Assembly (NCBI RefSeq): GCF_006345805.1
Contig: NC_043007.1
Coordinates: 67,456,001 to 67,520,000 of the forward strand
Length of the DNA: 64,000 bases
Direction: 5' to 3'
From: Octopus sinensis
Taxonomy: Eukaryota
Of this stretch, positions 26,479 through 58,345 are shown one piece after another (positions within the stretch are counted from its first letter, which is position 1; each line of letters opens with the position of its first letter). The notes beneath the pieces are model-generated. The model was given only the letters and a program-made list of their open reading frames with translations, made no database searches and was not told the origin of the DNA. The translations under genes and the position numbers were made by a program.

Positions 26479-26584
26479 CTGGAATGATAAAAAGAAAAGT
26501 TGAAAGATACTAGAATGTATAAATTCCAACACATTAATTAACAGCAATTGTCTATATAAGAAGAATTTATTAAACGATACTTAC

Positions 26585-27180: not shown

Positions 27181-27574
27181 CTGGAAGAACAGAATAACTG
27201 GTATAAGAACATGAAGTTGTCACAAAATAATACTAAAGAATATTAATTTATATTGTTCTTTTTCAGGAACTCATATCTAAGACAATAAGCCTGTTTCGGC
27301 TTATTCATGAATTTAAGCTCTGTGACTCAATCTTTTTATTAATTACTAAAGTTTCTTTATGCTTCCCCAAATCTATGATTCTACACTAATCCCAGTGTTC
27401 CATTAGACCAATCTCTATTTTTTCCTTTATTGCCATGAATCTACTCCTCTGATACATTTAACAGAAAAAGTATAATGATTTCTTGCAAAACCTGCTTCAC
27501 TTTAGAACTTACTCTTCTTGTCAATTTTCATAATATACTATTCTAAAGCCCATCAAAGTCTAATACTCAGTATG

Positions 27575-28200: not shown

Positions 28201-28259
28201 CACGTCTTTGTATTATACATTGATTAAATTAAAAGAACCTTCTTCATTAGCTAACTTAC

Positions 28260-28319
28260 TTCATAGTAGCAACAGCAGAGGAAACAGACACAGACTGACT
28301 TGTAACAGAATTAAAATAA
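28260..28319 (-). CDS. MDM1: Probable MDM1 60-nt cassette exon (PYFNSVTSQSVSVSSAVATMK)
   Basis: Donor AA|gtaagt, weaker acceptor gtctccag; phase 2->2, open, Ser-rich; not required for frame. Confidence 0.55.
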
Positions 28320-29253
28320 CTGGAGACTATTGTACAGGTTGAGTTATTTTCATTGTTAAGACACAGAGCAGAATAGAAAAGAGAAATATAAAGGCAGAAA
28401 ATAGAATCTGTAATAGATGTGTAGGTCTAGTGGTTTGATTAACATGTTTGCTTTGCAAGCATGTGGTTTCAGGTTCATAATAACTGTATCACATCTTGGG
28501 CAAATGTCTTCTATTACTGCCCAAGGCTAACCAATACTCTGGGAGTGAAATGGAAGTCAGAAACTGTAAGGTTTATTATGAGTGGATTTGGTTGACAGAA
28601 ACTGAAAGAAGCCCAGTGTGTGTGCAAAGTTTGTTTGTGTTTATCCTTGTCTTGACATCAAGTGATGATTGAAAATGAGCATCTCTATCATGCAAGCAAT
28701 GCTGCTCATTTCCTGACTTCTAAGGTAAAATATTACCTAGCAGGGAAAAAAGTAAGGGTTGGCAAGAGAAGGTCATCCACTATAGAAAATCTGCTTCAAC
28801 AAATTCTGTCTGGCCCATTCAAGCATGAAAAAATGGATGTTAAACATTGATGATGATGATGATGATAAGTATGTATGGATGTATAAGTGTGTGAGTATAA
28901 GTATGTGCATATGTGTGTTTGTGTCTTTGCTTAGTGTTGACATTTGCATACTGGTTGTCCACCTATTGAGCTTTTGTTGTTCAAAAGGACTAAAGGCAAT
29001 ATTATATAGCTTAATAACAGGTGATGGTTGGAGATAGGAAGAGCATCCAGAGGTAGAAAAACTGCTGCAACATGTTTTGTCTGAACCATGCAAGCATGGA
29101 AAAGTGGGTGTTCAAATAGCAATGAAAATGTGATAAATAGTGATATCTATATGAGGATATGATTAACAGGGATATTGGTATGATGATTTGATAAATACAG
29201 ATATCTGTATGATGATGTAATAAAAAAGGGATATCATAAAACAAATCACTTAC

Positions 29254-29477
29254 GGATAATAAGTTATTCCTGCTGGTTTCATCTGAGAAGGATCAATTGT
29301 TGTATTTGACAATTTTCTACAATTTTCCCATTTTTCTGTTTCCTTTGATATCAGCTGTACCATATGTTTTGAACAAAAGTGAGAGTCCAACGCTCTCTGC
29401 CGGTATTGTGCCGCCTTTTCACGTAATTCTAGCACCTGCTTGTACCAGTCTTCATATGATATATCTTCAGTTGGTAC
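29254..29477 (-). CDS. MDM1: MDM1 conserved core exon (VPTEDISYEDWYKQVLELREKAAQYRQRALDSHF...)
   Basis: Acceptor ccatcttaataag, donor CC|gtaagt; 224 nt, phase 0->2; WY-x-x-V-x-ELREKA-x-x-YR-x-R-x-x-x-x-HF is the MDM1 signature. Confidence 0.92.
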
Positions 29478-29635
29478 CTTATTAAGATGGAAGAAACAGT
29501 TTCTTGTGACAGATGATACACTCAAAACATATGTATAGATATTTGGCTTAGGCACTGCGATACTAATAACATGGTGTAGTACTCAATATACATAAGCTTC
29601 CGAATAAAGCATTAGTCAAGCATAGAGCAGTAGTA

Positions 29636-29892
29636 AAAAAAAAAGAGATGAGAAAGGAATAAATGATTATCTTATGAACTTAAGTACCAAACAGTTCTTC
29701 CCGTATAAGATGTTGTGGACTCATAGCAATGTGCCTGAGTAACAACTTATAGCTTCATCAGAGCCTCAAACATGAAGTGATAAGGAATTACTCAGACACT
29801 CAACTATGAGTCCACAGCATCTTATAGCAGAAACAGTTGTAAGCTAATGAAGTTCATAGGATGAGCATTTATTCCTTTGTCATCTCTTTTTT
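29636..29892. repeat. ~257-bp imperfect hairpin
   Basis: aaaagagatgagaaaggaataaatg...cttatgaactt pairs with aagttcatagg...catttattcctttgtcatctctttt; tataagatgttgtggactcatag pairs with ctatgagtccacagcatcttata. Confidence 0.82.
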
Positions 29893-29917
29893 CTTATAAC
29901 TTAACATTATGTACTTT

Positions 29918-30046
29918 ATAATCTCTGACGATGCCTAGAGATATATACAAGTACTTCATGTTCATCTACCTATTATTTCAATCCACTTGAGTAATAAAGG
30001 TAGAATGAGGTATTTTTATCTATTGGCTGAAACAGCTGTAAGTTAT
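29918..30046 (+). ncRNA. Type-I hammerhead motif with long helix II insertion, partly decayed
   Basis: ATAATCT-CTGACGA-tGCC...GGCt-GAAAC-agct-GTA-AGTTAT; helix III ACAGCTGT palindromic. Confidence 0.55.
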
Positions 30047-31367
30047 TTTCCCAATTTATATTCATGTTTTTTATAATAATTACTGGTATCCTTATATATT
30101 ACTATATTTTCTATCTTATATATGTAAAGAATAATATGTTATATGTATGTACATTATTGTAATTATCAGTTTAGTATATAAATAAATAAGTTAACATAAT
30201 ATAATGTCTAAAAGTTGATGAACCACCTATTGTTCTCCTCTATTTTCTTATTGCTATATATATATATCCTCATCCTCATAATCATCGTTTAACATCTACT
30301 TTCCATGCTAGCATGGGTTGGACGATTTTGACTGAGGACTGGCGGTGCATGTTCACGCCAAAGCAGACATTGGAATTTAGGGCTCGTCACAGCCTGCTGG
30401 CTCAGTGGTTTCTGTCTCAAACTGTCCAACCCATGCCAGTATAGAAAAAAAAAATGATGTTAAATGGGGAGGAAGATGATGAAGATATGCATATTACATA
30501 TGTATCTCCATTATTAATAATGGCCAATATAGATGTTAGTTGGTCACACTTTACATTGGTTGTTTCCAGTCATTCTTTACATTGTATAGACATGGGGAGA
30601 GAGAGAGAGAATAAAAGAGATACAGAGTGAGTTAACATAAGAGGTGCATGATGAGTGAACATACTAGGCTTGGTGGTAGGCAATGGCTAAAGGAAGGCTA
30701 CACATACTCAGAGAAAGAATCATAGAGACAGGGGAGTAGGAGAAGGAGAGGGAGTAAACAACAACAAACTGTTCAAAGTGAATATAACACCACAATTGCT
30801 ACAATAATATTAATATACTTTTGCCATCATGGCTAATATCAGGAAATATAGCACACATAAAATAATTGTAATTTAACTTTTATCAAATTACTTATGATGA
30901 CAAAAGTATACTTTCAAAATTACTCAAATTGTTAATATTAATAGATGATATAAGATGGTGAGCTGGTAGAATCATTAGCATGCTAGGCAAAATGCCACTA
31001 GGCATTTCATCTATCCTCATGTTTTGAGTTCAAATTCCACTGAGGTCAATTTTGACTTTCACCCTTTCAGGATCAATAAAATAAGTACCAATTGAGTACT
31101 GGGGTTGATATAATCGATTTACACACTCCTCTGAAATTGCTGGCCTTGTGCCAAAAATTGAAACCAGTATTAATGGATGATATAGTAATTGTTAATGGTT
31201 AATTAGAATAATTTATCTAATTATCTTGTTAAGGAATAAGTATTGCAAATTTGACATTAAAACAAAAATAGTTTTATTCCGTTTTTTATACTAAAGTTAT
31301 GATCTTACATAATTCAAGAGAAATTAAAAACACCAACAGTATTTAACAGTAGAGAAGGTTAATTTAC

Positions 31368-31455
31368 CTCTGGTTCCTTATTTATCCAGGCATTTTTAAC
31401 ATAAGAAAATGATGAGGGCGAATTGAAGTTTTTCTGGTATTCAGACATTAAAACT
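31368..31455 (-). CDS. MDM1: MDM1 exon with SEYxxxF repeat (VLMSEYQKNFNSPSSFSYVKNAWINKEPE)
   Basis: Acceptor ctttcctttag, donor GAG|gtaaat; 88 nt, phase 2->0; SEY...F-x-SP...Y...AW pattern of MDM1. Confidence 0.9.
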
Positions 31456-32118
31456 CTAAAGGAAAGCAATAATAATAATAATAATAATAATAAAGGATTG
31501 TATTTAAAGCGTGTGTAAATTTTTTCATATTTAGTATTTCATTTTAAATGAAAAATAAATTCAAGTGTGGACAAAAATTACTTCCATATGAAAATAAACC
31601 AAGAGAAAAAGTGGAATTTGAGAATACAAGGAACCAGTAAGTTTCCAGATGAAGTAGATAGAACCAGTAATCAAAATAAACCAAGGACAATAATCATGTT
31701 TTTTTTCAAATTCTCCATGTTACATAAATATGAATATCTCAAATCAAAAGAAAACAAAACTGATTCCTTTGGTATAACACCAGATTTTGATCAAATGAAA
31801 CTGTTTATTAGCAAAGAGCACAAACTCTTCAAAAATACAATTGTATTAAATAACCCTTTAGCATTCAGGTTTCTCTGTCAAGTGTAATGCTTTTTTATTC
31901 ACATTGATATGAATTAGTCATGCATTATTTTGTAGCTTTGAGATTTCAATGATATGATTGTTTATTTTTAGAATAACATTATAGGGGAAGAGTGGCCAGT
32001 TTGAACATGAAATAGTTGGATTATTTTGGCTGGATATGGCTGGTTTGAATGTTAAAGGGTTAACGAATAAAGTCATTAAATAGTTTTTAGAAAAAAAATC
32101 AAATGACATTTTACTCAC

Positions 32119-32164
32119 ACAGGGGGACTTTTATCATTCTTCAGTTCAGGATGTGAAGTAACAG
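32119..32164 (-). CDS. MDM1: MDM1 46-nt exon (SVTSHPELKNDKSPPV)
   Basis: Acceptor ttttattttacag, donor GT|gtgagt; phase 1->2. Confidence 0.78.
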
Positions 32165-32990
32165 CTGTAAAATAAAATTGTCAAGAACACACGTGAGGAT
32201 ATTTAAACGGTCAAATATCCACATTTGGATAATCCTAATGATTTCTTATTTTGGTACATCCTCTCTTTTATAATGTGATTAAATATATAACTCCGCTCCA
32301 ACAAAAAATCTCTTCTATTCTGGTTCCTACTTTCCTACTTTAACCTCTTATCCCCAAGCATAAAGCTACCTTCTTACAAGAAACTGCTGCGTTTCTTTCT
32401 TTGATGTTTTACATAGTTCAGTGTACACAAAAGAATGTGTGATAAAAATAAATAGGAATTTTGAAAGAAGTATCTATAAAACTAGCTTCTAAACATCGAA
32501 CGGCTATGGAGGTCCACCAGAATAAAATAGTAACCAAAGGGTTCCATAGACAAAAAATGGTTGAGAACCACTGCTTTTGAGGGTCAATAAATAGGATACC
32601 ATTTCAGTATGATGGAACAACGAGGTCATTAGAACATCCAACAAGATACCTTGTAGCATCTGTTCTGGTACTTTGCATTCTAAGTTCAAATGCCACCTTA
32701 CATCAATGACTTCCTTGTGTCGTGAAATTGGCTCTTTCAGGATCTGGATAATGATGATAGGTCCCTAACATTGTGTCAATTAGAACATCTTAGATATATC
32801 AAAGCACACAAATGGACTCTCCACAAAAGGGAATAAATGCTTAGAAAAAAGAAATAGGGTACAAATTAGGGGAATAAAATAGAAAAAGTAGTTATCTAAC
32901 TTAGATATTCTTTGATAGAATTTGATAAATAAAAAAAAAAAAACACAACTATAATTAATTGAATATTCAATTAAGAAAGAAATTTCTTAC

Positions 32991-33015
32991 ATTCAAGACT
33001 TTTGGCTCTTTTCAT
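32991..33015 (-). CDS. MDM1: MDM1 25-nt microexon (MKRAKSLE)
   Basis: Acceptor ttttttatctttacag, donor T|gtaaga; phase 0->1; needed with the next exon to restore frame. Confidence 0.75.
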
Positions 33016-34468
33016 CTGTAAAGATAAAAAATACATTTTCACTTGTAACAAACAAAAGAAAAGAATCACGTGACATGATCATAGTGACTTCAAATTTTGG
33101 CACAAGGCTAGCAATTTCAGTGGGGCATAAATCAATTACATCAACCCCAGTGCTCAACTGGTACTTATTTTATCAACCCCGAAAGGACGAAAGGCAAAGC
33201 TGACCTTGGCAGTATTCGAACACAGAATGTAAAGTCAGAAGAAATGCTGCGAAGCATTTTTCACAGTGTGATAAAAATTGTGCCTACTCGTCACCTTGTA
33301 ATATGATACTATCATAGTGTAATGTTATTTAATATATATATTTCATTTATAAGGCACAACAATGTAATGTCCATGCCTTTTCCAAGAGTATTAGTAGCCG
33401 TATCAAAGTAAAAGTGTTTCAATTAGGAATTGAAACTGTTTTATGGGCTCATTGTTCAAGATTATCCTTCTTCTACGACATGTAGCACTGTCAAATACAT
33501 TTAGAGTATATATTAAATTTCTTAATTATGATTTGATACTTCATAATAAATCATGTTATATTAAAACTATAGTAGTATTACATTACGACAGGCATAGTTG
33601 GGTGGTTAAGAAGTTTGCTTCCCAGCCATGTGGTTTTGGGTTCAGTCCCAATGCATGGTACCTTGAGAAAATGTTTTCTGCTTATAACCACAGGCCAACT
33701 GAAGCTATGTGAGTAGTTTTGTAGATGGAAATAGAAAGAAGCCTATTGTGCATACTCACAGAGTGGTTTGCGTTAGGAAGGGCATCCAGCTGTAGAAACA
33801 CTGCCAAATCAGACTGGAGCCTGGCGCAGCCTCCTAGCTTTCTAGACTCTGGTTGAACCGTCCAACCCATGCTAGCATGGAAAATGGACATTAAATGATG
33901 ATGATGATGATATATACATATATATATATATATCTGTGTATCATAATTAATGTGTAGATACATCACAGAAAGCCAAATTAACTGCAGTATTTGTCCTGAG
34001 ACAAATTTATTTAACAGTGTATATTTATAAGAGATGTTGATCTCTTATAAATATACACTGTTAAATAACACTAAAATAAATCAGTACCAAGTGAAAATTA
34101 TCAGGCTGCAGTGGTGGTATTGGTAGATGCACATTTCTGCCACTTTTAGCTTTGTCAGTAGCAAGTGCTCACTGGCAACTGCATGCAGACAAAATCCATC
34201 ATCACCAATATAGGAAGACAGTAGCTGAAAAATCACTGATGTTGCATTTAGCCAAGCAGCTGAATAAAAATTTGTTATGTGCATCAGAAGCAGTATTAGT
34301 TTCAAATATCAAACTGCATATCATACTTAAAGCAGATACAGAATGCCAAATTAACTGCAATATTTAGCCAGAGATAATATTTTATTCATGTTATCTGGTA
34401 CAAGGAGGAAGGAGATGAGGAAGTTTTTCCGGAGTAAAATTGAAAAGTAGCTAGATTAAGCAACCAAC

Positions 34469-34897
34469 CTTATGTTTTGGCTCAGTTTTGTCACTGTCTT
34501 CAGTTCTTCTTGATGATGTTGGTCCACTGGTTTCTAATTTTGTTGACAAACTTTCTGTAGTCTTAACAGGTCGTGAGGATGTCTTTTTTTTTATGTCTTT
34601 TTCTTTATTCTTAACAGGTTGTGAGGATGTCTTTTTGCTGGGGCATACATCTTCAGTTGACTCTGATTTTGCCAATGCACCTATCCTTTCAGTTCTCTTA
34701 GAACTCACTGACTTGCTTCTACGTGGATGTTTTATTTTTTTCACAGAGGAATATTCATTTTCTACTGTAGATGCAGTAGAGCAGACATTTTTCTCAGATT
34801 GCGGGCTGCAAAAGTTCCTCTGATACTCTGACATTTTTACTACATAATCATTTTGAGAAGGGGCTTGAGTAAAATGGTTGCCTAAGTGAAAAAGGTT
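34469..34897 (-). CDS. MDM1: MDM1 exon with SEYxxxF repeat (NLFHLGNHF...KMSEYQRNFCSP...EPKHK) and internal KKTSS(Q/R)PVK duplication
   Basis: Acceptor ttttttcattcag, donor AAG|gttggt; 429 nt, phase 0->0. Confidence 0.9.
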
Positions 34898-37425
34898 CTG
34901 AATGAAAAAAGAAGAAAAAAAGAATTGGGTTAAACAAGTAATATGATTATAAACTACTACTACTATTGACCTGAAAGATTTTAATTCTCCATGTGAAAGG
35001 TGAGCAGGTTGATGCATGTCAGTTAATCCTTTTTATCTCATACACAATACGTTACAACATTTTACCAGGTAATGTGTGTAGAGCATAACAGCAGCTGCTA
35101 GTTGTTAAAAATTATACCTCCCAAAACTTGATTGTGATTCTGCCCAGAAGCTTGTGGCTGTGTGGTAAGTAGCTTGCTTACCAACCACATGGTTCCGGGT
35201 TCATTCCCACTGCATGGTACCTTGGGCAAGTGTCTTCTACTATAGCCTCGGGCCAACCAGAGCCTTGTGAGTGGATTTGGTAGACGGAAACTGAAAAAAG
35301 CCTGTCGTATATATGTATGTGTTTGTCCTCCTAACATCACTTGACAAACGATGCTGGTGTGTTTACGTCCCCGTAACTTAGCGGTTTGGCAAAAGAGACT
35401 GATAGAATAAGTACTAGGCTTCCAAAGAATAAGTCCTGGGGTTGATTTGCTTGACTTAAAAGGTGGTGCTCTAGCATGGCCGCAGTCAAATGACTGAAAC
35501 AAGTAAAAGAGTAAAGAGTATATCAATGATTGGGTTCCACTGAAGTCAAAGACCCAACTGTAATATGCTATGTGTTTCAAGGACTATTCATATCAAGAAA
35601 ACACCACTGTATCATAACTCCTGTAAACATGTACAACACTCAGCTAGAACCCTCATAGTCACTTTAAATGTCACCAAGGATTTCTCTAGGTAAAAACACT
35701 TAATTACCATAGCTAAGAAAAACATTCCACAAACTGGTCCTTCTTTTTAGGGACAAAACTATTTCAATCCCCAACATCCTATAAAATTCAAATAAGGCCT
35801 GAAATGGGGCTTTGACCTCTGGATGTTGCAGGTACTATACGCATGCATGCACACACATCTTGGACAGTGTCCAGACAAGGTCCACTTAACAGATTGGAAT
35901 TCAATCATTAATGGACATGCTGTCTCCTCTTTCTGTCTTTTCTATTGCTACTATATTGCTTCTGCTTCTTGGAACTGGTTGGTCTCATTCCTTCACCACT
36001 CAGGCACCTCTGACCCCTTCATCTCTCTTGTTGCATCTAATTTTTCTGGCCCTGTACCAACACCTAAGTCCAATTCTTACTCCCTAATATTATCAATCCT
36101 TTGGAATCACCTCCCCATTCACGTCTTTCCTGCAGGTTTTGACCTGTAACAATTTAAACAGAGCAAAATTAATGGCACAATGGTTATGAGCACTGTTGCT
36201 TTCTCCTGAATTAGTGTGGTATTACTCTTTTACTTTTTTATTTGTTTCAGTCATTTGACTGTGGCCATGCTGGAGCACTGCCTTTAGTCGAAGAAATTGA
36301 CCCCAGGACTTATTCATTGTAAGCCTAGTACTTATTCTATCAGTCTCTTTTGCCGAACCACTAAGTTATGGGGACGTAAACACACCAGCATCGGTTGTCA
36401 AGCGATGTTGGGGGGACAAACACGGACACACAAACATTTACCACCATTGGTTGTCAAGCGATGTTGGGGGGACAAACACGGACACACACACATACATATA
36501 CATATATACGACGGGCTTCTTTCAGTTTCCGTCTACCAAATCCACTCACAAGGCTTTAGTCAGCCCAAGGCTGTAGTAGAAGACACTTGCCCAAGGAGCC
36601 ATGCAATGGGACTGAATGCAGAACCATGTGGTTGGTAAGCAGGCTACTTACCACACAGCCACTCCTGCGCCTATTAGATTAGAATTTAAACAAAATGACA
36701 CTCCCTTAAAATTATGATACTTATGATGCTTGTCCATGTTTACATGGGTCAGATGGGATTTGTTGAGACAGATTTTCCTTTTATCAGATGCCTTTCCTGT
36801 CACCAACCCTTACCTGCTTCCAAGGAAGGTATTATTTCCCCATGGCTGGACATTTTCACAGATGACTGCAAATGAAGGCCACCATTTGTATCATAGTGGC
36901 ACATTTTTTACACATATTAGTTTGCTTCCCAACCCATGTGGCATTGGGTTCTGTCCAACTGCAAGGCATCCTAGGTAAGTGACTTCTGCTATCACCTCAG
37001 GTTGACCAAAGCCTTATGAGCAGATTTGGTAAATGGAAACTGAAAGAAGCCTTTCCTAGATGTGTGCATATGTGTGAGTGTGACATATATGTGTGTACAT
37101 GTGTTTGTGCTTCCTCATTTTTACATCATATCAGAATTGTAAGCAAGAGTCTATGTCATACAAGTGGTATCATTTATTTCCACCCTTCCATGTAAACATA
37201 TCCAGTCAGGGGAAAATACTACCTGGCTTGGAAACAAGTGAGGGTTAGCAACAGGAAAATCTGGCTCTGACCCATGCAAGCATGTAAAAGTGGATGTTAA
37301 AACAATAATGATGATGATGATGATGATGTTGATGAAAATGATGTAAAGATGATGATGATGATGATTTATTTAAAAGCTATAAAACAATGAAATAGTTGAA
37401 CAAGTTTAAATAAGGGAAAAGTTAC

Positions 37426-37557
37426 CTTAGGTTTTTGTACCAAAGAATCTGTTTTCAAAGGTTTCTTCGCTGTGAAGTTTTTCTGATATTCTGAAGACCT
37501 TATTGCAGAACTTCTAGGCGGACCTAAGCCAGATCTATAGAGCAATCCAAGTAATTT
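37426..37557 (-). CDS. MDM1: MDM1 exon with SEYxxxF repeat (KLLGLLYRSGLGPPRSSAIRSSEYQKNF...)
   Basis: Acceptor ttccccacaccag, donor AAG|gtaact; 132 nt; S-E-Y-x3-F microtubule-binding motif. Confidence 0.9.
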
Positions 37558-39291
37558 CTGGTGTGGGGAAAAAACAAAAAAACAAAACAAAACTATAGAA
37601 TAGGAAAAACATGAATGTGAAAAGAACATTTGGTTTCTCAATTGGTCAATTCTGTTCCCTGTCATTAAAAAATGTAATTACATAAGAATTTCTCTCTCCT
37701 TTCTTCCTTCTTTTTCCAACTCCTCTTGCACTCCTTTTATAATGTTGAAAATTAAATTTAATATAATGTTACATTTAATAAACCTAGATCACTGACTAAG
37801 TCGTACTGATGAGATCCAGCTAAATTGAAATAGCAGCTATATATATTAAATACTTATGATTAAATGAAAAATTAAATGAAAGAAAATTTAATACTTTTTT
37901 CTCTTTTACTTGTTTCAGTCATTTGACTGCAGCCATGCTGGAGCACCGCCTTTAGTTAAGCAAATCGACCCCAGGACTTATTCTTTAAAAGCCTAGTACT
38001 TATTCTATCGGTCTCTCTTGCTGAACCGCTAAGTTACGGGGGACGTAAAAACACCACCATCGGTTGTCAAGCGATGTTGGCGGTACAAACACAGACTCAC
38101 AAGCATATCTATATACATATATACGATAGGCTTCTTTCAGTCTCTGTCGACCAAATCCACTCACAAGGCTATAGTAGAAGACACTTGCCCAAGGTGCCAT
38201 GCGGTGGGAATGAACCTGGAACCTTGTGGTTGGTAAGCAAGCTACTTACCACACAGCCACTCCTGCACTTGTATAAGGAAATTTAATACTATACACCTTT
38301 CACTTTGCTAAACAAAAGGAACATGAATTCTTAGCAAGAAGATTCTCTCCTTTACCCTAGAGTACACCCAAAAAAACAGTTCAAAACACCAGCTGTCCCA
38401 GAATTCCTTGTACTAATGAATCGAATACATTATAAACACATATTTGCCATAAAGAACAGGCTGTTCTCCTGTGATGAATACAACAATGATTAGTATATTC
38501 ACATTGAAATCAATCAGAACATATTAAGAATAAATATGCAAGTCATCACTTTGAATCTCTTTGATCATTGTGCACATGACAAAGTTGGCAGATATCAGCA
38601 TGGATCAGCAAACAGTTGGCTGAAATTATAAATAAGACCATCAACTCTTGTTAAATTCATTGTTCTGAGGGTGCTTCTGGCTGACAAGTTACAAAGATGT
38701 CAAAACACTGGCTGTCCTAAGAATCTTATGTGCTAATGAACTTAGTGTATTATGAACACATATTTGTCATAAAAAAGGTGTTCTTCTGTGACAAACACAA
38801 CAGTGGTTAGCTTATTCACATTTGAATCTACTGGAACATATCAAGACTAAATAAATATGCAAGGCATTGTGTATGTGTGTATATAATTATTATTTAATAA
38901 ACACAATATATGTTTCTTTGTGCTACTTTTAGTTTCATGTGATGAAAACATACCAACAGTATTTTTAACATGTCTGGTGCCTTAGCACAATCTTCAAACA
39001 CTGCCCACATGGCATAACAAGCTAAATATAGGACAATAGGATAAGAGAAAAAGCAAGAAAAGGTGAGCAAAAATCGCTATGCTAATCACATACCTTCATT
39101 CCAACACAAGGACAAAAGTAAAGCTACTAAGTTGGCTAGCCATGTATGGGGTTTGATGGCTAACACCATATCACATACGATAAACTGGAAAATACAGTTC
39201 TATATTTGAGAGATGAGGAATTATGTACATTATTTACATTCCTAAGGCATTTTTCTGATGTTATTATAGTTATTATCATTATTATTCCCTC

Positions 39292-42665: not shown

Positions 42666-42869
42666 CTACTCTTTCAAGGTAATATGACTAAGAGGGTGAA
42701 TAGGAGACAACACAATGACAGAAGATGAACTAGAGAAAGAAGAGAGCATGAGGTGCAAAAATAGGGTAAAGGTGGCGAACAAGGTTGCATTGCTCCCAAC
42801 AAGGCTAAGAATCCTTGCTATCTTACAGCATCTCCATTTGTCCAAGGTAACAGTGTTATTAGGAAACAG

Positions 42870-43337
42870 AGTGGCCGTTTGCCAGCTCTGTCTGGCAACC
42901 GTGTCGGTGGCACGTAAAAGCACCATCCGTTCGCGTCCGTTGCCAGCCTCGGCTGGCTCCCGTGCCGGTGACACGTAAAAGCACCGTCCGTTCGTGGCCG
43001 TTTGCCAGCTCTGTCTGGCCCCGTGTCGGTGGCACGTAAAAGCACCATCCGTTCGTGTCCGTTGCCAGCATCGCCTGGCCCCGTGCCGGTGACACGTAAA
43101 AGCACCATCCGTTCGTGGCCATTCGCCAGCTCTGTCTGGCACCTGTGCAGGTGGCACGTAAAAAACACCCACTACACTTGCGGAGTGGTTGGCGTTAGGA
43201 AGGGCATCCAGCCGTAGAAACACTGCCAGATCTGACTGGGCCTGACGAAGCCTTCCAGCTTCACAGACCCCAGTTGACCCGTCCAACCCATGCTAGCATG
43301 GAAAGCGGACGCTAAATGATGATGATGATGATGATGA
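42870..43337 (+). mobile_element. Short element with RTE-like 3' tail and (GAT)n end, with 5' array of ~61-bp monomers; copies 7073-7400(-), 8977-9200(-), 19556-19929(+), 23190-23468(+), 33757-33911(+)
   Basis: Shared gtggttggcgttaggaagggcatccagc(c/t)gtagaaac...ccaacccatgctagcatggaaagcggac..aa(t/c)gatgatgat. Confidence 0.85.
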
Positions 43338-48133: not shown

Positions 48134-49411
48134 TTGGGTCTTCCCATAAATAATGTGATTTTTTAAATTGCACGAACTAAAAGCTGGAGGGGGCGGGATA
48201 AACTACTTGCATCAACTTGCTATAAAAGCAGGTAGTAATTTTCCCTTGTACTTATTCTTAGTGCAAGTTTTGAAGAGTGCAGTTCGATTTTAACAGTTAT
48301 TTTTTTCAAAGCTATAATGGAAGTGACAAAGGAGCATATTTGGCACATTTTGCTTTATGAGTTCAATAAAAGCAACAATGCAATGGAAAGTGCAAGGAAT
48401 ATTAATGCAGTATATGGGGATCAGACAATAAGCATAAGTCAGTGTCAATGATGGTTCCAGAAATTCTGAACCAGAAACTACATCCTAGAAGACGAGCCTT
48501 GTCCTGGAAGATCTGTAGAGCTTGACAAGGACATCCTGCAAACCCTGGTAGAACAAATCCTATTGTAACTGTTGAAGAACTAGCAGAGAAACTTGGATTT
48601 GGTCATTCAACCATTCATCGACACCTGCGTGCCATTGGAAAAGTCAATAAATTAGGTCAATGGGTTCTGCACAAACTTTCTGAGTCTAATCATGTGCAGA
48701 GAGTGAATGTGTGCTCTTCTTTACTGTCACATCTCATGAATGAACTTTGTTTTTGGACCGAATAGTGACAGGTGATGAGAAATGGGTTCTCTCTAAAAAT
48801 GTCAAATGCCAAAGACAGTGGGTAGGGAAAGGAGAAACACCAGACTAAAGAAGGTCTTCACCTATGTAAAGTGTTGTTATCTATTTGGTAGGATATGAAA
48901 GGTTTAGTCCACTTTGGACTTTTAAACCCAAACCAAACGATAACAAAGGAGATCTACTGCGAGCAATTTGAGCAGCTTGAGTCAGCACTAAAAGAAAGAT
49001 GACCATCTTTGATTTCAAGACAAAAGGCGTTCTACCATCAGGATAATACTCAACCACATACAGCAAGGATGACATTCTAAAGGCTGGAGCAGTTTGAATG
49101 GGATACGATGCCCCGCCCACCATATTCGCTGGACATTGCCCCATCTGATTATCATTTATTCCACAGTCTTCAAAATCATTTGAATGGAAAAAATATGAAT
49201 TCTGTAGATGAGGTCAGAACAGAACTGGAGGAGTATTTTTCATCATGGACAAATGAATTTTGGAAGAGGGATCTTGCAAGTCTACCAGATAGATGGAAGA
49301 GCATTGTAGAAAATGAAGGAGAGTATATTTTAGATTAAAAAAGAACTTTGTTTATCTTAATTCTAAAAAATAAAATTTTTAAAAAATTGCATTCTTTATG
49401 GGAAGATCCAA
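48134..49411 (+). mobile_element. Full-length but decayed mariner (D,D34D) transposon, ~1.28 kb
   Basis: TIRs ttgggtcttcccataaa / tttatgggaagatccaa with TA on both sides; transposase ATG 48317 to stop 49338 with TGDEKW, HQDN, YSLDIAPSDYHLF; stops and frameshifts. Confidence 0.93.
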
Positions 49412-50213: not shown

Positions 50214-50490
50214 TCAATTAGGTGGCCAATTGTCCAGAGGGTGAGCTGATTCGTGATGTCCTCCTCCTACCTCCATTTCCCAACTGGCACAAATGCACGG
50301 GCAGGCAGCTGAAGACCTGGGCAACGACGATAAACGAGGACCTCTCCAAACTCTCAGGTCTGCAGGTGGTCGGTCTGCGCAGATGGAACCGCGAATGGCT
50401 CGCGATCTCCAGTGACCTCGCACAGGACTGTCGGGCGTGGGCCGCCATGGTTCATGATGCCATCAGGACCAGAGAAGAAGCTGGCTCAAC
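50214..50490 (+). mobile_element. 3' fragment of a second RTE-clade LINE
   Basis: ELIRD-x-LL-x-P...GRQLKTW...RRWN-x-EW...LAQD-x-x-AW-x-A-x-x-x-D pattern. Confidence 0.75.
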
Positions 50491-51057
50491 GCCATCACAC
50501 CCCCACAAAAAAATTAGATGGCAGTTTTGGGGTGTGGTCAAGAATGTTTGTACATGTATCAGCAACACCATCCTAGATGTAGGAGTCATACTCCATTGTG
50601 GGTCTTACCTGAGCTTTGTAAAGGATTTCTAGTTTTTTGTTCAAGTAGAGGAAGGCCAGTCTTTCTCATGAATGTTTTTTCTATCTTGAAGATATGCGTT
50701 TGTCACAAGATACTCAGTGAGGGTGAAACTTAGCATTAAGTGACCTTGAGAGATTTTCATGCTTGTTGTTCATGTAAAAGATACTAATGTCTAATCTAAT
50801 ATAGAATAGCTTAATACCAAGAATTGTTGATCTTTCAAGTAATCTATATTACTTCTAGATACATCAGTGTCAACCTCCCAGTTATGTCTTTTATAGAGAG
50901 TATAATTCTAAGGATAGACTAAATTAAATATTGCTCAGTGACTAAATTAAGAACTCATGACATGGAAAGAAAGATTATGACCAACCAATAAGGTGAACAT
51001 GTTACTTAAAGGAACCCAGCAGTTTCCTAAACAGTTCTTGTTTCTTTCAACACTTAC

Positions 51058-52745: not shown

Positions 52746-54349
52746 CTAATTAAAAAAACAAAAACAAAAACAAAGCAGCATTTAGAAGTCACAATTAAAA
52801 TATATATAATTACAAAGTTTTTTCTTACAAAAAAAGCATAGTTAATAATTAATTAATTCTGGGAATAGTTATAGCAAGGGTATGAAAACAACATAAAAGT
52901 TCATAAAATTATTAATTTTGTTTAACCCTTCCACATTCACATTGTTCTATCAAAAGCATTGCTTATTTATTCACATTGTTTTGAATTAATCTTGCATTAT
53001 TTTGTAGCTTTGAAATTTTGATGAGGTCGGGCATGGCTGTGTGGTTAGGGAGCTTGCTTCCTAGCTATATGGTTTCGGGTTCAGTCCCACTGCGTGGCAC
53101 TTTGGGCAGGTGTCTTCTACTATAGCCCCGAGTCGACCGAAGCTTTGTGATTGAATTCGGTAGATGGAAGTTACTGCCGTGTGTGTATATGTACGTGTAG
53201 GTGCTCAGTGCCTCTCCGAAAGAGAGAGAGGGGGAAGGTAACTGTTAATTCTTAGAATGATATTGTAGAGTAAGTGTGAGAGGCCAGATCTGGCCTGCTT
53301 GAACATAAAACAAGTAGAATATTTTTGCCAGATATGGCCAGTTTAAATGCTAAAGAGTTAAACACCTAAAAATTTCAAATGAGTTCTTAATAAGACTAGA
53401 ATTTACCATATTACTAATCCTATCTTTAGATTCTATATTTACAGCACTTATATCTACACTACATTTTTCATAACCATCATTATAATAATAATAATAATAA
53501 TAATGAAATTATTGTATACAGTGCTCAGGTGCACCACAACATGTCAGAAAGTGCATATAAAGTATATGCAGTAATGTACAAATGTCTGGAAAGCGAACAA
53601 TGTATGAATCAGATACATGCTTGTGTGTGTATGGAGGGGAGAAAATCAGGTGTAGTGTTGGCGAATCTCTGGAAGTTTGGAAGGATGCAGTGCTCCGTCA
53701 ACTAACAATCGATGCCGGCAGTTTGTTCCATGCTTCAGCAACCTTCAGTGTCTGATGCCTCATCTGTTTTGACATTCGTACATGTACCAGAGACAATTCA
53801 AACTAGGAACTTTTATTTCTGAACTTCTCGGCATTGATATGACTGTGTTTCAAACGTTTGCTTCCAAAGCAAACAATAGAGTTCAGTCCCCCTGCTCGGC
53901 ATCTTTGGCAAGTAAGTGTCTTCTACTATAGCCCCAGGCTGACATAAGTGATCCTTTACATTAAAAACGCTAAGAGTTAGCAATAGGGAGGGCATCAAGC
54001 TGTAAAACAATGTCTCAACAACATATTTGGTTAACCCATGCAAGCATGGAAAAACAGACATAAAAACAAATGAAGAATACATAGTTTTACTTACATTTTA
54101 CGTAACTAATATTGAATAAATAAATGTACAAAAATTTTAAAACAAGCAATACCTTTTATATATATATATATATAATAAATATTAGGGAATAAATCCAAAT
54201 TTACAGGGAAAAAATCAGATTTAGGATTAAATCTAATTTTATAGTAAAATATTATAAAATATTATTAGAGACAAAACCACTATTTTGCAAAACAAACAAG
54301 GAAAGACTTAATCAATACATAAAATTTTAATAAATAGTCAAAAAAACCG

Positions 54350-54392
54350 CCACTACAATTGTTTCTTGTCTTGATCGACAATCTTCAGGTGG
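54350..54392 (-). ncRNA. Type-I hammerhead ribozyme motif, identical inverted copy
   Basis: Exact reverse complement of 57638-57680. Confidence 0.72.
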
Positions 54393-57300
54393 ACTTCCAA
54401 TCTAAAATATCAATATTTTAAAATATAAAAATAATAATTTTAAAATAATTAAAGTATGAATGAAAAAATATAAATATATAATCCATATATAACCTATATA
54501 TAATCCATATATAATCAATATATAAACAATATATAAACTAAAATAAACCCATCAACAATTAAATATAAAATATAAAATATAAAACAAAACAAAAAAATAA
54601 TAATAATATAATAATAAACTATATATACACCCATACACATATACCTAATTATATATAACCATATCTAACTACATACACTAAATCACACACCTATATATAT
54701 ATCCCTATACATACACATAAAAACGTCTAGGCAACTATAAATAAATAAAATAGCTAAATACTTCAACACAATACTTATTCATACTCCCACACACACACAC
54801 ATACAACCCACATTCACGCTCTAGAAAACAGACATCACTTAAAATTATGAACGGAGAAATGGAATAAATGGAATTAAAAATTATATTCACTTGGTAAAAC
54901 GAACACTACTTAAAAATTATGAATGAAACAATGCAATAAAACAACAGACATCGCAAATAGACACAAAATTACTACGAATTCCTTAACAAACCTACCATGA
55001 TAAACCAAAACTCATAAAAACATATAATGATAAAATCTCCCTTTACTAAACTCTATAACATACCTATATAGCAATCCCCCTAACCTAAACATTCACACAC
55101 AAATACACACACGTAAACCACACACCCACGACATATAGTTGCACATATCGAGCCCAACTAGCATGCATATGTACATGTGAGGGGGTACACGTACATGCCG
55201 TGCGCGTGTACCCCCTGCATTTATACCCGTGCGTGAATATACACATGGAGAGTACCACACAGGTACAAATGTGTATAGTAATGGGAGCCCCATCACTACA
55301 CTCAATGTATAATCTCACCCATCCGCACGGATGTGAAAGTGAATCTCCGGTGTATATGTTGAGGCTTATATGTAGCGCTGTGGAGGTGAACGTCGTTGAA
55401 ATTGTGAATGAATGGGTGGAGCTGGGAATTGTAACCGGGTGGTGGGCTAGCGTTGCTTGGAATTGGGAATGGAATAGTGTAGTAGTAAGGCAGGCATCGA
55501 GAATAGATTTGGGTTATTGCAAGTTGTTTGTTAGAGCTGCTAAGATGAGCTAAAGCTCAATTGTATATAATAATTTATTATGGTAGTTTTATTAAAGAAT
55601 CCATTCATAATAAATTTTTTTTAAGTAGTGTTGGTTTGCCACGTGGATATAGTTTTTAGTTCCATTTATTCTATTTCTCCATTCATAATTTTAAATGACG
55701 TTTACTTTCCATGGCGCGTATTCTTTTTTTACATAAGTTATATTTCTATGGTAACGTAATTTTGGTTTGATTTTTTTAACGGCTAAGAATTTAATTTCAC
55801 TTCATAATTGAAAGACTTGTAAGTATGTATTTTATTTCTCCTTATGTCATATTGTTATTTTTGATATTCTGGTTAATTACGATGTATTTAATGTGTTTTT
55901 TATTGGAGTGTTTATGTATATGAGATTGTGTGTGAGTTTTTAGTTGTATAATTTATTTATCTGTATGAGTGTGGGTGTGTAAATATTGTTGTATATATCG
56001 AGTTTAGTGAGTATGTATATGCGTATATGTGAGGGAGTATATGTATCTGTTGTGTGTGTGTGTTTTGCGTGTGTGTGTGTTTGTGTGTGAATGTGTATAT
56101 GGGTTTGTTATTTAGGTTTTGGGATGTATGTGTTAATTTGTTGTGTGTGGGGAGGGAGTGGGTTTTTGGTGTATATTGAGGCTTATAAGTTAGTATAGGT
56201 ATGTGTATAAGTCGTGGGTCTGTGGTTTACGTGTGTGTTTTTTGTGTGTGAATGTTTAGGTTAGGGGGATTGCTATATAGGTTTGTTATAGAGTTTAGCA
56301 AAGGGAGATTTTATCGTTATATGTTTTTAAGAGTTTTGGTTTATCATGGTTTTTTTAGGGAATTCGTGGTAATTTGTCTATTTTCGATGTTGGTTGTTTT
56401 ATTACATTGTTTCATTCATAATTTTTGAGTGGTGTTCGTTTTGCCACGTGAATATTATTTTTAATTCCATTTATTCCATTTCTCCATTCATTATTTTAAA
56501 AGATGTTCGTTTCCAGAGTGGTTATACTTTTTATACATATGTTAAGTTCCTTGGTAAAGTAATTTTGTTTGGTGTATATGTTGAGGCGTATATGTACTTG
56601 TGGGTGTGTGTGAGTGGGGTGGGTGTTTGTATTTGTTATGGGTGTGTGGTTTACGTGTGTGTTTGTGTGTGAATGTATAGGTTAAAGGGATTGCTATATA
56701 AGTATGTTATAGTGTTTAGTAAAGGGAGGTTTTATCATTTATGTTTTGTGAGTTTTAGCTTATCATGGTAGTTTTATAAAAGAATCCATTCATAATTTTT
56801 TTGTGTTTATTTGTCTGTGTGGGGTTGAGTGGGTTTTTGGAGTATATGTTGAGGTTTATATGTATGTATAGGTATGTGTAAGTGGTGTGGGTATTTGTAT
56901 ATGTCGTGGGTGTGTGGTTTACGTGTGTGTATTTGTGTGTGAATGTTTAGGTTAGGGGGATTGCTATATAGGTATGTTATAGAGTTTAGTAAAGGGAGAT
57001 TTTATCATTATATGTTTTTATGAGTTTTGGTTTATCATGGTAGGTTTGTTAAGAATTCGTAGTAATTTGTGTCTATTTGCGATGTCTGTTGTTTTATTGC
57101 ATTGTTTCATTCATAATTTTAAGTAGTGTTCGTTTTACCAAGTGAATATAATTTTTAATTCCATTTATTCCATTTCTCCGTTCATAATTTTAAGTGATGT
57201 CCGTTTTCTAGAGCGTGAATGTGGGTTGTATGTGTGTGTATGTGGGAGTATGAATAAGTATTGTGTTGAAGTATTTAGCTATTTTATTTATTTATAGTTG

Positions 57301-57637
57301 CCTAGACGTTTTATGTGTATGTATAGGGATATATATATAGGTGTGTGATTTGTGTATGTAGTTAGATATGGTTATATATAATTAGGTATATGTGTATGGG
57401 TGTATATATAGTTTATTATATTATTATTATTTTTTGTTTTGTTTTATATTTTATATTTTATATTTTATATTAATTGTTGATAGGTTTATTTTAATTTATA
57501 TATGTTTATATATTGATTATATATGGATTATATATAGGTTATATATGGATTATATATTTATATTTTTCATTCATACTTTAATTATTTTAAAATTATTATT
57601 TTTATATTTTAAAATATTGATATTTTAGATTGGAAGT

Positions 57638-57680
57638 CCACCTGAAGATTGTCGATCAAGACAAGAAACAATTGTAGTGG
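57638..57680 (+). ncRNA. Type-I hammerhead ribozyme motif
   Basis: CCAC-CTGAAGA-TTGTC(gatcaa)GACAA-GAAAC-aatt-GTA-GTGG. Confidence 0.72.
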
Positions 57681-58163
57681 CGGTTTTTTTGACTATTTAT
57701 TAAAATTTTATGTATCGATTAAGTCTTTCCTTGTTTGTTTTGCAAAATAGTGGTTTTGTCTCTAATAATATTTTCTGCTGTACTCTTTCACCACTCTAAA
57801 AGGCGGTGCTCCAGCATGGCCGCAGTCAAATGACTGAAACAAGTACAAAAAAAAAATATATATATTTTAATAATATATAATTATTAATATTAGGAAATCA
57901 ATATCAAAACTCCCCAGAAAGATATACACGTGTGAAAAATAATTGTTGTATTAAAAATATATAAATAAATAAATATAAATATGTATAAAAATATATGTAA
58001 ATATGTATAAGTATAAATATATAATGTATATGACAGTTTAAAAGTTTTGAATTAATTATTTGAAGCATCTTACGATCGTTTCACAGAAGATTTGTCCCTA
58101 TAATGTAAATATAAATTCAGTATATAATATTCTCATTGAATATATTTAACTAAAGATTTATAC

Positions 58164-58345
58164 CTTTTTTATATTGAAATATCTTTTTGGTTTATAACAG
58201 ATATTTCCTTCAAACTTGTCATTTCTTCCCAGCAGCATATAATCCGCATTTGAGTCATGTTCTTTTACTGAAAAGTCACTTGATAAACAAGTAACAGGAC
58301 CTTCACGTCTCTTCTTTCTTTGTAGACATGGTTCAAACAACACAC
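58164..58345 (-). CDS. MDM1: MDM1-like exon A1 (GVLFEPCLQRKKR...ADYMLLGRNDKFEGNICYKPKRYFNIKK), most 5' exon found
   Basis: Acceptor tttttag|GT, donor AAG|gtataa; 182 nt, phase 1->0; G-x-x-x-EP-x-x-x-x-K-K/R-R matches the MDM1 N-terminal GITKEPSFISKRR segment as recalled. Confidence 0.75.

What the first reader, a model, noticed from the sequence alone, without database searches (positions are those of the whole stretch)
54170..57774. ~3.5-kb fold-back with ~880-bp near-identical inverted arms
54256-55137 is the reverse complement of 56898-57774 with only a few mismatches, implying a recent origin. The left arm extends further into a (TA)n tract at ~54157-54175, and the right arm is truncated against a SINE tail. 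Inverted and partial-tandem pseudo-LTRs are typical of Penelope-type insertion. In the MDM1 pre-mRNA this could form a very long dsRNA. That would be an ADAR or Dicer substrate, relevant in coleoids where A-to-I editing is extensive, and it loops out next to the duplicated exons.
Basis: partly seen in the sequence, partly recalled or inferred. Interest (0 to 1): 0.75.

Follow-up and report, generated by a model that had tools for sequence, protein, structure and literature searches.

The report
Young non-coding fold-back repeat near MDM1
Two almost identical 0.88-kb copies really do face each other across 1.8 kb here, but they are the ends of a non-coding, internally repetitive DNA block with no sign of a Penelope retroelement; this is an ordinary kind of structure whose only odd feature is an extreme one-strand base bias.

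Summary
The inverted repeat is real. 54256-55137 is the reverse complement of 56898-57774, with 5 transitions and 10 small indels in about 880 nt. The rest of the reading needs correction.

- **Spacer:** it is not unique. It is a tandem array of five older, diverged direct copies (72-90% identity) of the inner part of the right arm.
- **Left arm:** it stops at 54256 and does not reach the (TA)n tract.
- **Coding and RNA motifs:** there is no ORF above 117 aa, no Pfam domain in six frames and no Rfam match. Reverse transcriptase, GIY-YIG endonuclease and hammerhead ribozyme are all absent.
- **Penelope features:** only the geometry fits, an inverted shorter copy sharing the outer terminus.
- **MDM1:** it is present on the minus strand, but all recognisable exons lie at 26.5-37.7 kb. 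Whether the fold-back is intronic or upstream is unknown.

Long arms with unequal numbers of internal tandem repeats and no coding capacity fit a non-autonomous foldback-type element best (about 0.4). An in-situ template-switch duplication is the main rival (about 0.3). Copy number could not be tested because no genome of this organism was available.

If the region is transcribed, about 870 bp of duplex is predicted, which is the conventional ADAR substrate.

One thing is unexplained: one strand is almost free of C over about 2 kb. A single unit keeps C at 31 sites where its best-matching paralogue has T.

The parts
54256..55137 (-). Left arm: inverted copy of 56898-57774. It is A/C-rich on the + strand, with G at 0-4% over most of it.
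56898..57774 (+). Right arm: continuous with the tandem array to its left. It is G/T-rich on the + strand.
57207..57774 (+). Outer domain of the arm, mirrored at 54256-54825. It is not repeated in the spacer. It holds short tandem sub-repeats (11-mer x6-7, 7-mer x4-9, 22-mer x2). The last ~170 nt have normal base composition.
55138..55340 (+). Unit S-alpha: the first array unit, lying head-to-head against the left arm. It has balanced composition (C 26%) and CpG o/e 0.76. It carries perfect short palindromes, a 13-bp stem and a nested 9+5-bp stem. It is homologous in direct orientation to 55988-56137.
55341..55929 (+). Diverged unit S-beta. 55349-55374 matches 56571-56596 (25 of 26). 55581-55767 matches 56391-56570 at 77%.
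55930..56128 (+). Unit U2, C-poor. 55952-56117 matches 56806-56973 at 72%.
56129..56567 (+). Unit U3, C-poor. 56129-56512 matches 56802-57206 at 84%, and matches left arm 54826-55137 at 90%.
56568..56801 (+). Unit U4, C-poor. 56568-56813 matches 56836-57079 at 83%.
56802..57206 (+). Unit U5, the last array unit. From 56898 onward it is the inner part of the right arm.
57775..57868 (+). Tail-only fragment of the window's common SINE (consensus 321-386), followed by an A10 run and then TATATATATTTT. That last stretch may be the SINE's own target duplication of TAATAATATTTT at 57763-57774 (9 of 12). It is the only tail-only copy among about 11 copies in the window.
54246..54265 (.). AAAATATTAT occurs twice in tandem across the left boundary, once in the flank and once as the first 10 nt of the arm. 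A similar AAAATATATAT follows the SINE A-run at 57853-57863. This is a possible target-site duplication but is not significant on its own.
54157..54175 (.). (TA)9 tract, 80 nt outside the left arm. It is not part of the repeat.

Best explanation
This is a genuine, evolutionarily young, non-coding fold-back.

Anatomy (shown). A 2.6-kb block spans 55138-57774. It has six diverged direct units of a roughly 0.2-0.6-kb minisatellite, followed by a 0.57-kb outer domain. The outer 0.88 kb of this block is repeated in inverted orientation and sits head-to-head against the other end of the block (54256-55137). Both arms therefore end outward at the same nucleotide.

Most likely origin (inferred). The whole 3.5 kb is one discrete inserted unit with the architecture of a non-autonomous foldback-type DNA element. 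Such elements have long terminal inverted repeats with an outer domain and an inner domain of tandem repeats present in unequal numbers in the two arms (here one against about five), and no coding capacity. The near-identity of the arms then reflects recent insertion or arm-to-arm homogenisation. A SINE tail later inserted at the TTTT/A site at the right terminus.

Consequences (inferred).
- Any transcript through the region would fold into a duplex of about 870 bp. That is the standard kind of substrate for ADAR hyper-editing and dicing.
- At the DNA level the arms can recombine to invert the spacer, so neither arm can be called the parent.
For: - The arms are 99.4% identical at aligned bases, while the internal units are only 72-90% alike.
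- The arms contain nested short tandem sub-repeats, and the inner tandem units occur in unequal number on the two sides.
- There is no ORF above 117 aa, no Pfam domain and no Rfam family.
- Both arms end at the same nucleotide against unrelated flanks.
- On the right that end coincides with the only 5'-truncated, tail-only SINE copy in the window. This suggests 57774 is a real discontinuity and not just the point where copying stopped.
- The described anatomy of foldback elements matches: outer flanking domain, tandem-repeat domain of variable number, non-coding middle, 8-10-bp TSD, as in Tetris (PMC4079207) and Galileo (PMC3573991).
- The arms are predicted to pair over 860-871 bp in RNA of either strand.
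Against: - No second copy exists in the 64-kb window, and no genome of this organism could be searched. The defining property of a transposon, a family of copies with the same termini, is therefore untested.
- No clean target-site duplication is present. The AAAATATTAT / AAAATATATAT pair is weak and lies across the SINE.
- There is no true middle domain. The unit next to the junction, S-alpha, is itself a homologous array unit.
- If the block had simply inserted into a SINE, the SINE's 5' part should lie on the left flank. It does not.
- All eight single-base indels make the left arm longer. That pattern fits one error-prone copying event at least as well as transposition.
Confidence: 0.4

Rival explanations
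1. In-situ inverted duplication. The minisatellite block was native to this site. A break or stalled fork inside the array at 55138 was repaired by fold-back or template-switch synthesis (MMBIR/BIR-like). That synthesis copied 56898-57774 from the complementary strand and was then joined to the left flank.
For: - The left arm abuts an array unit directly.
- The sequence around the junction, CATATA-GTTG-CACATAT, is purine-pyrimidine alternating and nearly self-complementary. This could support a strand switch.
- S-alpha next to the junction is full of short perfect palindromes, as expected at complex template-switch junctions.
- All 8 single-base indels, and 9 of 10 indel events, make the left arm longer (2/256 for 8 of 8). 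That suggests one low-fidelity synthesis.
- No other copy lies in the window.
Against: - Copying would have had to stop within 0-22 nt of the boundary of a SINE fragment that is itself atypically truncated.
- There is no microhomology at the inner junction in the register required for fold-back priming.
- The 10-nt sequence at the left boundary is duplicated rather than shared.
Confidence: 0.3
2. Penelope-like insertion. This would be a non-autonomous PLE laid down as an inverted 5'-truncated copy next to a longer copy, with both 3' ends pointing outward.
For: [quoted passage not shown]
- Non-autonomous forms and internal tandem repeats are known for PLEs.
- (TA)n is a preferred target of the Naiad clade (PMC8557442).
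- (TA)n tracts lie 80 nt to the left and just beyond the SINE on the right.
Against: - No RT or GIY-YIG remnant is found in six frames at E<=1.
- No hammerhead ribozyme is found.
- The tandem copies are 72-90% identical and lack the 3' end, so they are not pseudo-LTRs.
- The same paper says the cephalopod elements of its Naiad clade were inactivated long ago and survive only as remnants, whereas these arms are 99.4% identical.
Confidence: 0.07
3. LINE-mediated chimeric retrocopy. Reverse transcription began on a SINE RNA tail and switched after about 65-85 nt to a G/U-rich non-coding RNA (55138-57774). A second priming event on the other target strand (twin priming) then made the inverted 0.88-kb copy.
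For: - It explains without coincidence why a tail-only SINE piece with an A10 run sits exactly at the right terminus.
- The left flank ends in AAAATATTAT, preceded by a TTTT/A-type cleavage site on the bottom strand. A similar AAAATATATAT follows the A-run.
- That 10-mer is exactly complementary to the last 10 nt before the SINE piece, as an internal priming site would be.
- SINE copies in this window do carry 7-15-nt target duplications.
Against: - Twin priming normally yields non-overlapping inverted and direct segments, not an 880-nt overlap.
- The 10-mer is present twice on the left, not once.
- Fifteen differences in 880 nt are too many for one RNA copied twice, so they would have to be later changes.
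- The SINE piece has an equally good target duplication of its own, 9 of 12.
- The flank similarity is weak (p about 0.015).
Confidence: 0.08
4. Assembly artefact: a chimeric or mis-joined long read introduced the inverted copy.
For: - Ten of the 15 arm differences are indels.
- Eight are single-base differences, six of them in mononucleotide runs of at least 3 nt, which is the typical long-read error class.
- Low-complexity, strand-skewed sequence is hard to assemble.
Against: - The contig runs on normally for kilobases on both sides and has no gaps.
- The inverted copy is separated from its partner by 1.76 kb of structured sequence rather than being joined directly.
- Two of the five substitutions are CpG/TpG differences, as in real decay.
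- The indel direction bias would not arise from reads of both strands.
Confidence: 0.08

Closest known systems
Foldback-type DNA transposons (Drosophila FB, Galileo of the P superfamily, Tetris; PMC3573991, PMC4079207)
   Same: - Long inverted arms of up to 1-1.7 kb.
- An outer unique domain.
- An inner domain of tandem repeats whose number differs between arms.
- Non-coding, non-autonomous copies.
- Internal repeats that can expand into satellite-like arrays.
   Different: - No verified 7-10-bp target duplication.
- No family of copies shown.
- No transposase partner.
- No distinct middle domain.
- The arms differ fivefold in repeat number.
- One strand is almost free of C.
Penelope-like elements with pseudo-LTRs (PMC8557442)
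   Same: An inverted shorter copy abuts the 5' end of a longer copy and shares the outer (3') terminus. (TA)n tracts lie nearby.
   Different: - No RT.
- No GIY-YIG.
- No hammerhead ribozyme.
- The tandem copies are old internal repeats lacking the 3' end, so they are not pseudo-LTRs.
Fold-back inversions and inverted duplications made by template switching or break-induced replication (from general knowledge of MMBIR/FoSTeS)
   Same: - An inverted copy with a spacer.
- A junction in quasi-palindromic sequence.
- Short palindromes beside the junction.
- An excess of frameshift-type differences in one copy.
   Different: The outer boundary coincides with a repeat boundary. There is no shared microhomology at either junction.
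Inverted young repeat pairs as ADAR substrates (for example inverted SINE pairs; PMC9989829)
   Same: Nearby, low-divergence inverted copies are predicted to form a long intramolecular duplex in a transcript.
   Different: The duplex of about 870 bp is much longer than a SINE pair. Transcription and editing of this locus are untested.
Strand-coordinated deaminase hypermutation (APOBEC editing of retroelements, PMC4866542; fungal RIP, from general knowledge)
   Same: One paralogue differs from another almost only by C/T, all in one direction and on one strand (31:0).
   Different: - About 91% of C positions differ, with no dinucleotide preference. That is far beyond typical APOBEC or RIP footprints.
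- A/G differences accompany the C/T differences.
- Polarity is undetermined.
- No such process is known in molluscs, although AID/APOBEC-like genes exist there (PMC5889660).

Membership tests
Penelope-like element | Reverse transcriptase ORF or recognisable remnant | tested here: not met
   The longest ORF is 117 aa. A six-frame translation of 54100-57900 with stops masked gives no Pfam family at E<=1.
Penelope-like element | GIY-YIG endonuclease domain | tested here: not met
   No Pfam hit in any frame.
Penelope-like element | Hammerhead ribozyme in the pseudo-LTR (canonical clades; Naiads lack it) | tested here: not met
   Rfam finds nothing in the window at gathering score and nothing in 53800-58200 at E<=1.
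Penelope-like element | Pseudo-LTR: an upstream partial tandem copy that includes the element's 3' end and is made at insertion, so is near-identical | tested here: not met
   The tandem units are 72-90% identical and none contains the outer 570 nt.
Penelope-like element | Inverted 5'-truncated copy adjacent to the 5' end, sharing the 3' terminus | tested here: met
   The arms lie head-to-head at 55137/55138 and have identical outer ends.
Penelope-like element | Dispersed family with many 5'-truncated copies | not testable with these tools
   No genome of this organism is in any searchable collection. The control scan with the abundant SINE was also empty.
Foldback-type DNA transposon | Long terminal inverted repeats | tested here: met
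   882-nt and 877-nt arms with 866 identical columns.
Foldback-type DNA transposon | Arms internally repetitive, with tandem repeat number variable between arms | tested here: met
   11-, 7- and 22-nt sub-repeats lie within the arms. There is one inner unit on the left against about five on the right.
Foldback-type DNA transposon | Target-site duplication of 7-10 bp | tested here: inconclusive
   AAAATATTAT lies immediately left of the arm. The best counterpart, AAAATATATAT, lies beyond the SINE piece. Flank similarity has p about 0.015.
Foldback-type DNA transposon | Multiple genomic copies with the same termini, and an autonomous partner | not testable with these tools
   No other copy lies in 64 kb. 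No genome was available.
Intramolecular dsRNA substrate of ADAR/Dicer | Long near-perfect duplex in a single transcript | tested here: met
   RNAfold of 54200-57830 pairs 860 arm-to-arm base pairs on the + strand and 871 on the - strand. MFE is -1822 and -1590 kcal/mol.
Intramolecular dsRNA substrate of ADAR/Dicer | The locus is transcribed (inside the MDM1 pre-mRNA) and shows A-to-G clusters or small RNAs | not testable with these tools
   MDM1 exons are recognised only at 26.5-37.7 kb on the minus strand. There are no RNA data.
LINE-mediated retrocopy with 5' inversion (twin priming) | 3' LINE/SINE tail with A-run, flanking target duplication, and non-overlapping inverted 5' segment | tested here: inconclusive
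   The tail and A10 run are present. The duplication is weak. The inverted and direct segments overlap by 880 nt, which is atypical.
Nuclear copy of mitochondrial DNA | tRNA genes or mitochondrial-code ORFs | tested here: not met
   No tRNA is found. The longest open stretch under code 5 is 154 codons, open on both strands. There is no Pfam hit.

The most novel reading that the evidence does not exclude
The block may record a strand-specific transition hypermutation fixed in the germline of this animal.

One possibility is that a repeat copy had about 90% of its C converted to T, and some A to G, on one strand before being amplified. That would be a deaminase- or RIP-like attack on repeated DNA, which is not known in molluscs.

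The converse is that the one balanced unit, S-alpha, carries A-to-G at about 45% and C-to-T at about 26% of sites on the MDM1-sense strand. That would be an ADAR-hyper-editing-level footprint that reached DNA through an RNA-templated step.

The five differences between the arms all follow that second direction.
Probability: 0.1. Interest if true: 0.75.

Novelty: new member of a known kind. Interest (0 to 1): 0.3.

Why it matters
As a structure it matters little. Long inverted repeats built from young repeats are common in repeat-rich animal genomes. They are already regarded as the main source of ADAR-edited double-stranded RNA across metazoans (PMC9989829).

Three things would make it more useful.
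- If the arm turns out to be one of many copies, it would define a foldback-type element family in this lineage and a set of very long hairpin loci for studying hyper-editing.
- If it is polymorphic, it marks a fragile, invertible site next to MDM1.
- If the one-strand C-to-T/A-to-G pattern is seen at other repeats in the genome, it would point to a mutational process acting on repeats that has not been described for molluscs.

Tried and rejected
- **Coding remnants.** I used an ORF list, a six-frame Pfam scan and a translation under the invertebrate mitochondrial code. Nothing was found.
- **RNA motifs.** Rfam at gathering score and at E<=1, and a tRNA scan, gave nothing.
- **Other copies.**
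  - Self-BLAST of the window gave only low-complexity hits.
  - A purine/pyrimidine-coded search for transition-diverged relatives gave none.
  - An exact look-up of ten ORFs in the protein collection gave none.
  - A homologue search with the 117-aa ORF of S-alpha gave none.
  - A metagenome scan with a 23-mer from the arm gave none. The control with the abundant SINE was also empty, so this negative result says nothing.
- **Arms extending past the SINE or into the (TA)n tract.** Not significant.
- **Block inserted into a SINE.** The SINE-like head on the left flank (53881-53943) belongs to a different family with its own body, so there is no split SINE.
- **Array derived from the SINE's internal microsatellite.** Only the TATG/TGTG stretch matches.
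- **S-alpha as a hypermutated continuation of the left arm.** Inverted alignments score within the window-wide background (57-76 against a maximum of 85). Direct alignments score 98-141.
- **Polarising the C/T and A/G differences with other units.**
  - At six A/G sites the other units side with U2, and at three they side with S-alpha.
  - At most of the 31 C/T sites the other units carry T (66 of 84 aligned cells).
  - Transversions do not group S-alpha with U2. The root could therefore lie on either side, and the direction stays open. This corrects the parsimony remark in my notebook.
- **Locating the 5' exon of MDM1 through annotated homologues.** The protein collection returned a single 153-aa genomic fragment.


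Full report
**Observation.** The inverted repeat is real and lies at the stated coordinates. The repeat finder gives a colinear series of inverted blocks from 54256-55137 against 56898-57774. BLASTN joins them into one 888-column alignment of 1473 bits. A global alignment of the 882-nt and 877-nt arms has 866 identical columns, five mismatches (all transitions) and ten indel events. Eight of the ten are single-base differences; the other two are one 3-nt and one 6-nt unit of a short tandem repeat. The window has no gaps. The arm has no other copy in the 64 kb.

**Corrections to the description.**
- The left arm stops at 54256. The (TA)9 tract at 54157-54175 is 80 nt outside it, and the two flanks show no significant inverted similarity.
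- The 1760-bp spacer is not a unique loop. It is a tandem array of diverged partial copies of the inner part of the arm, all in the orientation of the right arm:
  - 56129-56512 matches 56802-57206 at 84%.
  - 56568-56813 matches 56836-57079 at 83%.
  - 55581-55767 matches 56391-56570 at 77%.
  - 55952-56117 matches 56806-56973 at 72%.
- The real anatomy is therefore a 2.6-kb block (55138-57774). It has six direct units and a 0.57-kb outer domain that is not repeated in the array. The block's last 0.88 kb is copied in inverted orientation and sits head-to-head against the block's first unit at 55137/55138.
- The arms also contain short tandem sub-repeats of 11, 7 and 22 nt.
- The internal units differ from each other by an ordinary mix of transitions and transversions, about 100 each over seven comparisons. 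The array is therefore old, and only the inverted duplication is young.

**Surroundings.**
- The right arm ends at 57774. The next 90 nt are the tail of the window's common SINE, followed by A10 and a TA-rich stretch. The best match is consensus 321-386 at 57799-57862, with weaker similarity back to 57775.
- About eleven SINE copies of this family lie in the window, and this is the only tail-only one. Full-length copies carry 7-15-nt target duplications.
- The fragment has a possible duplication of its own, TAATAATATTTT against TATATATATTTT, 9 of 12.
- On the left, the 10-mer AAAATATTAT occurs twice in tandem across the boundary. A similar AAAATATATAT follows the SINE's A-run.
- The flanks 54118-54194 and 57837-57902 align weakly in direct orientation, with 6 of 400 random window segments scoring as high. 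I treat this as a possible target duplication and nothing more.
- The left flank holds a SINE of another family at about 53856-54080. It is not the missing 5' part of the right-hand fragment.

**Test of the Penelope idea.** The published description of Penelope-like elements lists an RT plus GIY-YIG ORF and pseudo-LTRs formed by partial tandem insertion. [quoted passage not shown] The Naiad clade prefers (TA)n targets (PMC8557442). Here:
- The longest ORF is 117 aa.
- The six-frame translation with stops masked has no Pfam match at E<=1.
- Rfam finds nothing at gathering score in the window or at E<=1 in 53.8-58.2 kb.
- The tandem copies are 72-90% identical and lack the 3' end, so they are not pseudo-LTRs.
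- Only the geometry fits.
- The same paper states that the Naiads it studied in cephalopods were inactivated long ago.

I put this reading at about 0.07.

**Best reading.** The combination of features is the anatomy described for foldback-type elements such as Galileo and Tetris (PMC3573991, PMC4079207). These features are long arms, an outer unique domain, an inner domain of tandem repeats present once on one side and about five times on the other, no coding capacity, and identical outer termini against unrelated flanks.
- I favour a discrete inserted unit of this kind (0.4).
- The family property was not tested.
  - Ten ORFs of the region and of MDM1 are absent from the protein collection.
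  - The 117-aa ORF of the balanced unit has no homologue.
  - The metagenome collection holds neither the arm nor the abundant SINE, so it contains no DNA of this organism.
- The main rival is an in-situ template-switch or fold-back repair event within a native minisatellite (0.3). In its favour:
  - The sequence around the junction is purine-pyrimidine alternating and nearly self-complementary.
  - The unit next to it is full of short perfect palindromes.
  - All eight single-base indels make the left arm longer, as one error-prone synthesis would.
- Against that rival, copying would have had to stop within 0-22 nt of an atypically truncated SINE.
- A LINE-mediated chimeric retrocopy with twin priming would explain the SINE tail without coincidence, but it predicts non-overlapping segments (0.08).
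- An assembly artefact is unlikely given the gap-free context, the structured spacer and the CpG-type substitutions. It can only be excluded with reads (0.08).

**Function.**
- MDM1 is present on the minus strand.
  - 29250-29555 matches PF15501 positions 332-380 at 2e-12.
  - SEYxxxF-type motifs lie at 37494, 34831 and 31445.
- The fold-back lies 16.6 kb 5' of the most upstream of these. The exon at 37.4 kb looks as if it has an acceptor, so at least one further 5' exon should exist, but I could not place it. The only database homologue is a 153-aa genomic fragment. Whether the locus is intronic or upstream of the gene is therefore open.
- I found no duplicated MDM1 exons in the window.
- If the region is transcribed in either direction, the arms are predicted to pair over 860-871 bp.
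- Nearby young inverted repeats are the conventional source of ADAR-edited dsRNA across metazoans, octopus included (PMC9989829). The functional suggestion is therefore reasonable but ordinary, and it is untested here.

**The unexplained part.**
- The block is the only place in the window where C or G falls below 5% over 300 nt. From 55.8 to 57.7 kb the plus strand has about 4-5% C, 18-30% G and 46-50% T. The left arm is the mirror image.
- The sequence is complex, not a simple microsatellite.
- One unit, S-alpha (55138-55340), has balanced composition and folds as single-stranded DNA into perfect hairpins (z = -2.9). Its paralogue has no Watson-Crick structure at all.
- S-alpha aligns in direct orientation to the other units well above a window-wide background for alternating purine-pyrimidine DNA. 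Scores are 98-141 against a maximum of 85; inverted alignments are at background.
- Against 55988-56137, 31 of its 34 aligned C are T, 12 of its 40 aligned A are G, and the reverse differences number 0 and 2. There are 9 transversions.
- With neutral scoring the first 72 nt already show 16 C/T, 0 T/C and 4 other differences.
- The one-sidedness of the C/T differences follows in part from the other units having almost no C. What needs explaining is that truly homologous units differ in this way.
- Two histories fit.
  - The ancestor of the C-poor units suffered near-saturating C-to-T, and some A-to-G, on one strand before amplifying.
  - Alternatively, S-alpha acquired T-to-C (about 45% of T) and G-to-A (about 26% of G).
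- Comparison with three further units does not root the tree.
- The five substitutions between the arms are all, whichever arm changed, T-to-C or G-to-A on the plus strand (1 in 32).
- CpG is not depleted in the block (o/e 1.07; 0.76 in S-alpha), against 0.28 in the rest of the window.
- AID/APOBEC-like deaminases exist in molluscs (PMC5889660). No repeat-directed hypermutation is known there. I record this as an open observation, not as a finding.

**Verdict.**
- The structure is an ordinary kind of thing: a young long inverted repeat on a non-coding repeat block, probably a foldback-type element.
- The Penelope label fails its testable criteria.
- The base-composition asymmetry is the only feature that might repay a genome-wide follow-up.

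Noticed in passing
window 55800-57700 (+ strand) and mirror 54350-54850: Extreme one-strand composition: C is about 4-5% over roughly 2 kb of complex sequence. This is the only such stretch in the 64-kb window.
   Followed up: partly
window 55138-55340 versus 55988-56137: One array unit keeps balanced composition and perfect short palindromes. Its paralogue has T at 31 of its 34 aligned C and G at 12 of its 40 aligned A, with 0 and 2 reverse differences. The polarity could not be determined.
   Followed up: partly
arms 54256-55137 / 56898-57774: All five substitutions are T-to-C or G-to-A on the + strand whichever arm changed, and two are CpG/TpG sites. All eight single-base indels make the left arm longer.
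   Followed up: partly
window 1-53000 versus 55138-57600: CpG observed/expected is 0.28 in the bulk of the window, which indicates a methylated genome. It is 1.07 in the skewed block and 0.76 in S-alpha.
   Followed up: no
window 26538-37665, minus strand: MDM1 exons lie on the minus strand. 29250-29555 hits PF15501. SEYxxxF motifs are at 37494, 34831 and 31445. A large acidic ORF at 26538-27212 and an ORF at 34451-35017 are also present. No exon duplicates were found in the window.
   Followed up: partly
window 8221-60917, about 11 loci: A roughly 380-nt SINE with a tRNA-like head, an internal TATG/TGTG microsatellite and a conserved tail (…CAGTCAAATGACTGAAACAAGTAAAAGAG) occurs about once per 5-6 kb. 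Target duplications of 7-15 nt are visible at some copies. Other SINE families share its head module.
   Followed up: partly
window 42666-43286 (also 7117-7404 and 23149-23430): A repeated ORF-like sequence (…GAFYVP…) recurs at three places. At 42.7-43.2 kb it forms a G+C-rich internally repetitive stretch, the G+C peak of the window at 0.47.
   Followed up: no
window 13690-14261 and 49108-49338 (+), 50222-50632 (+): These ORF fragments look, from memory only, like remnants of mariner-type transposase and of a LINE 3' end. Pfam gave no match at E<=0.1, apart from a sub-threshold Aurora-A_bind hit at 0.02 for 49108-49338, so this is unconfirmed.
   Followed up: partly
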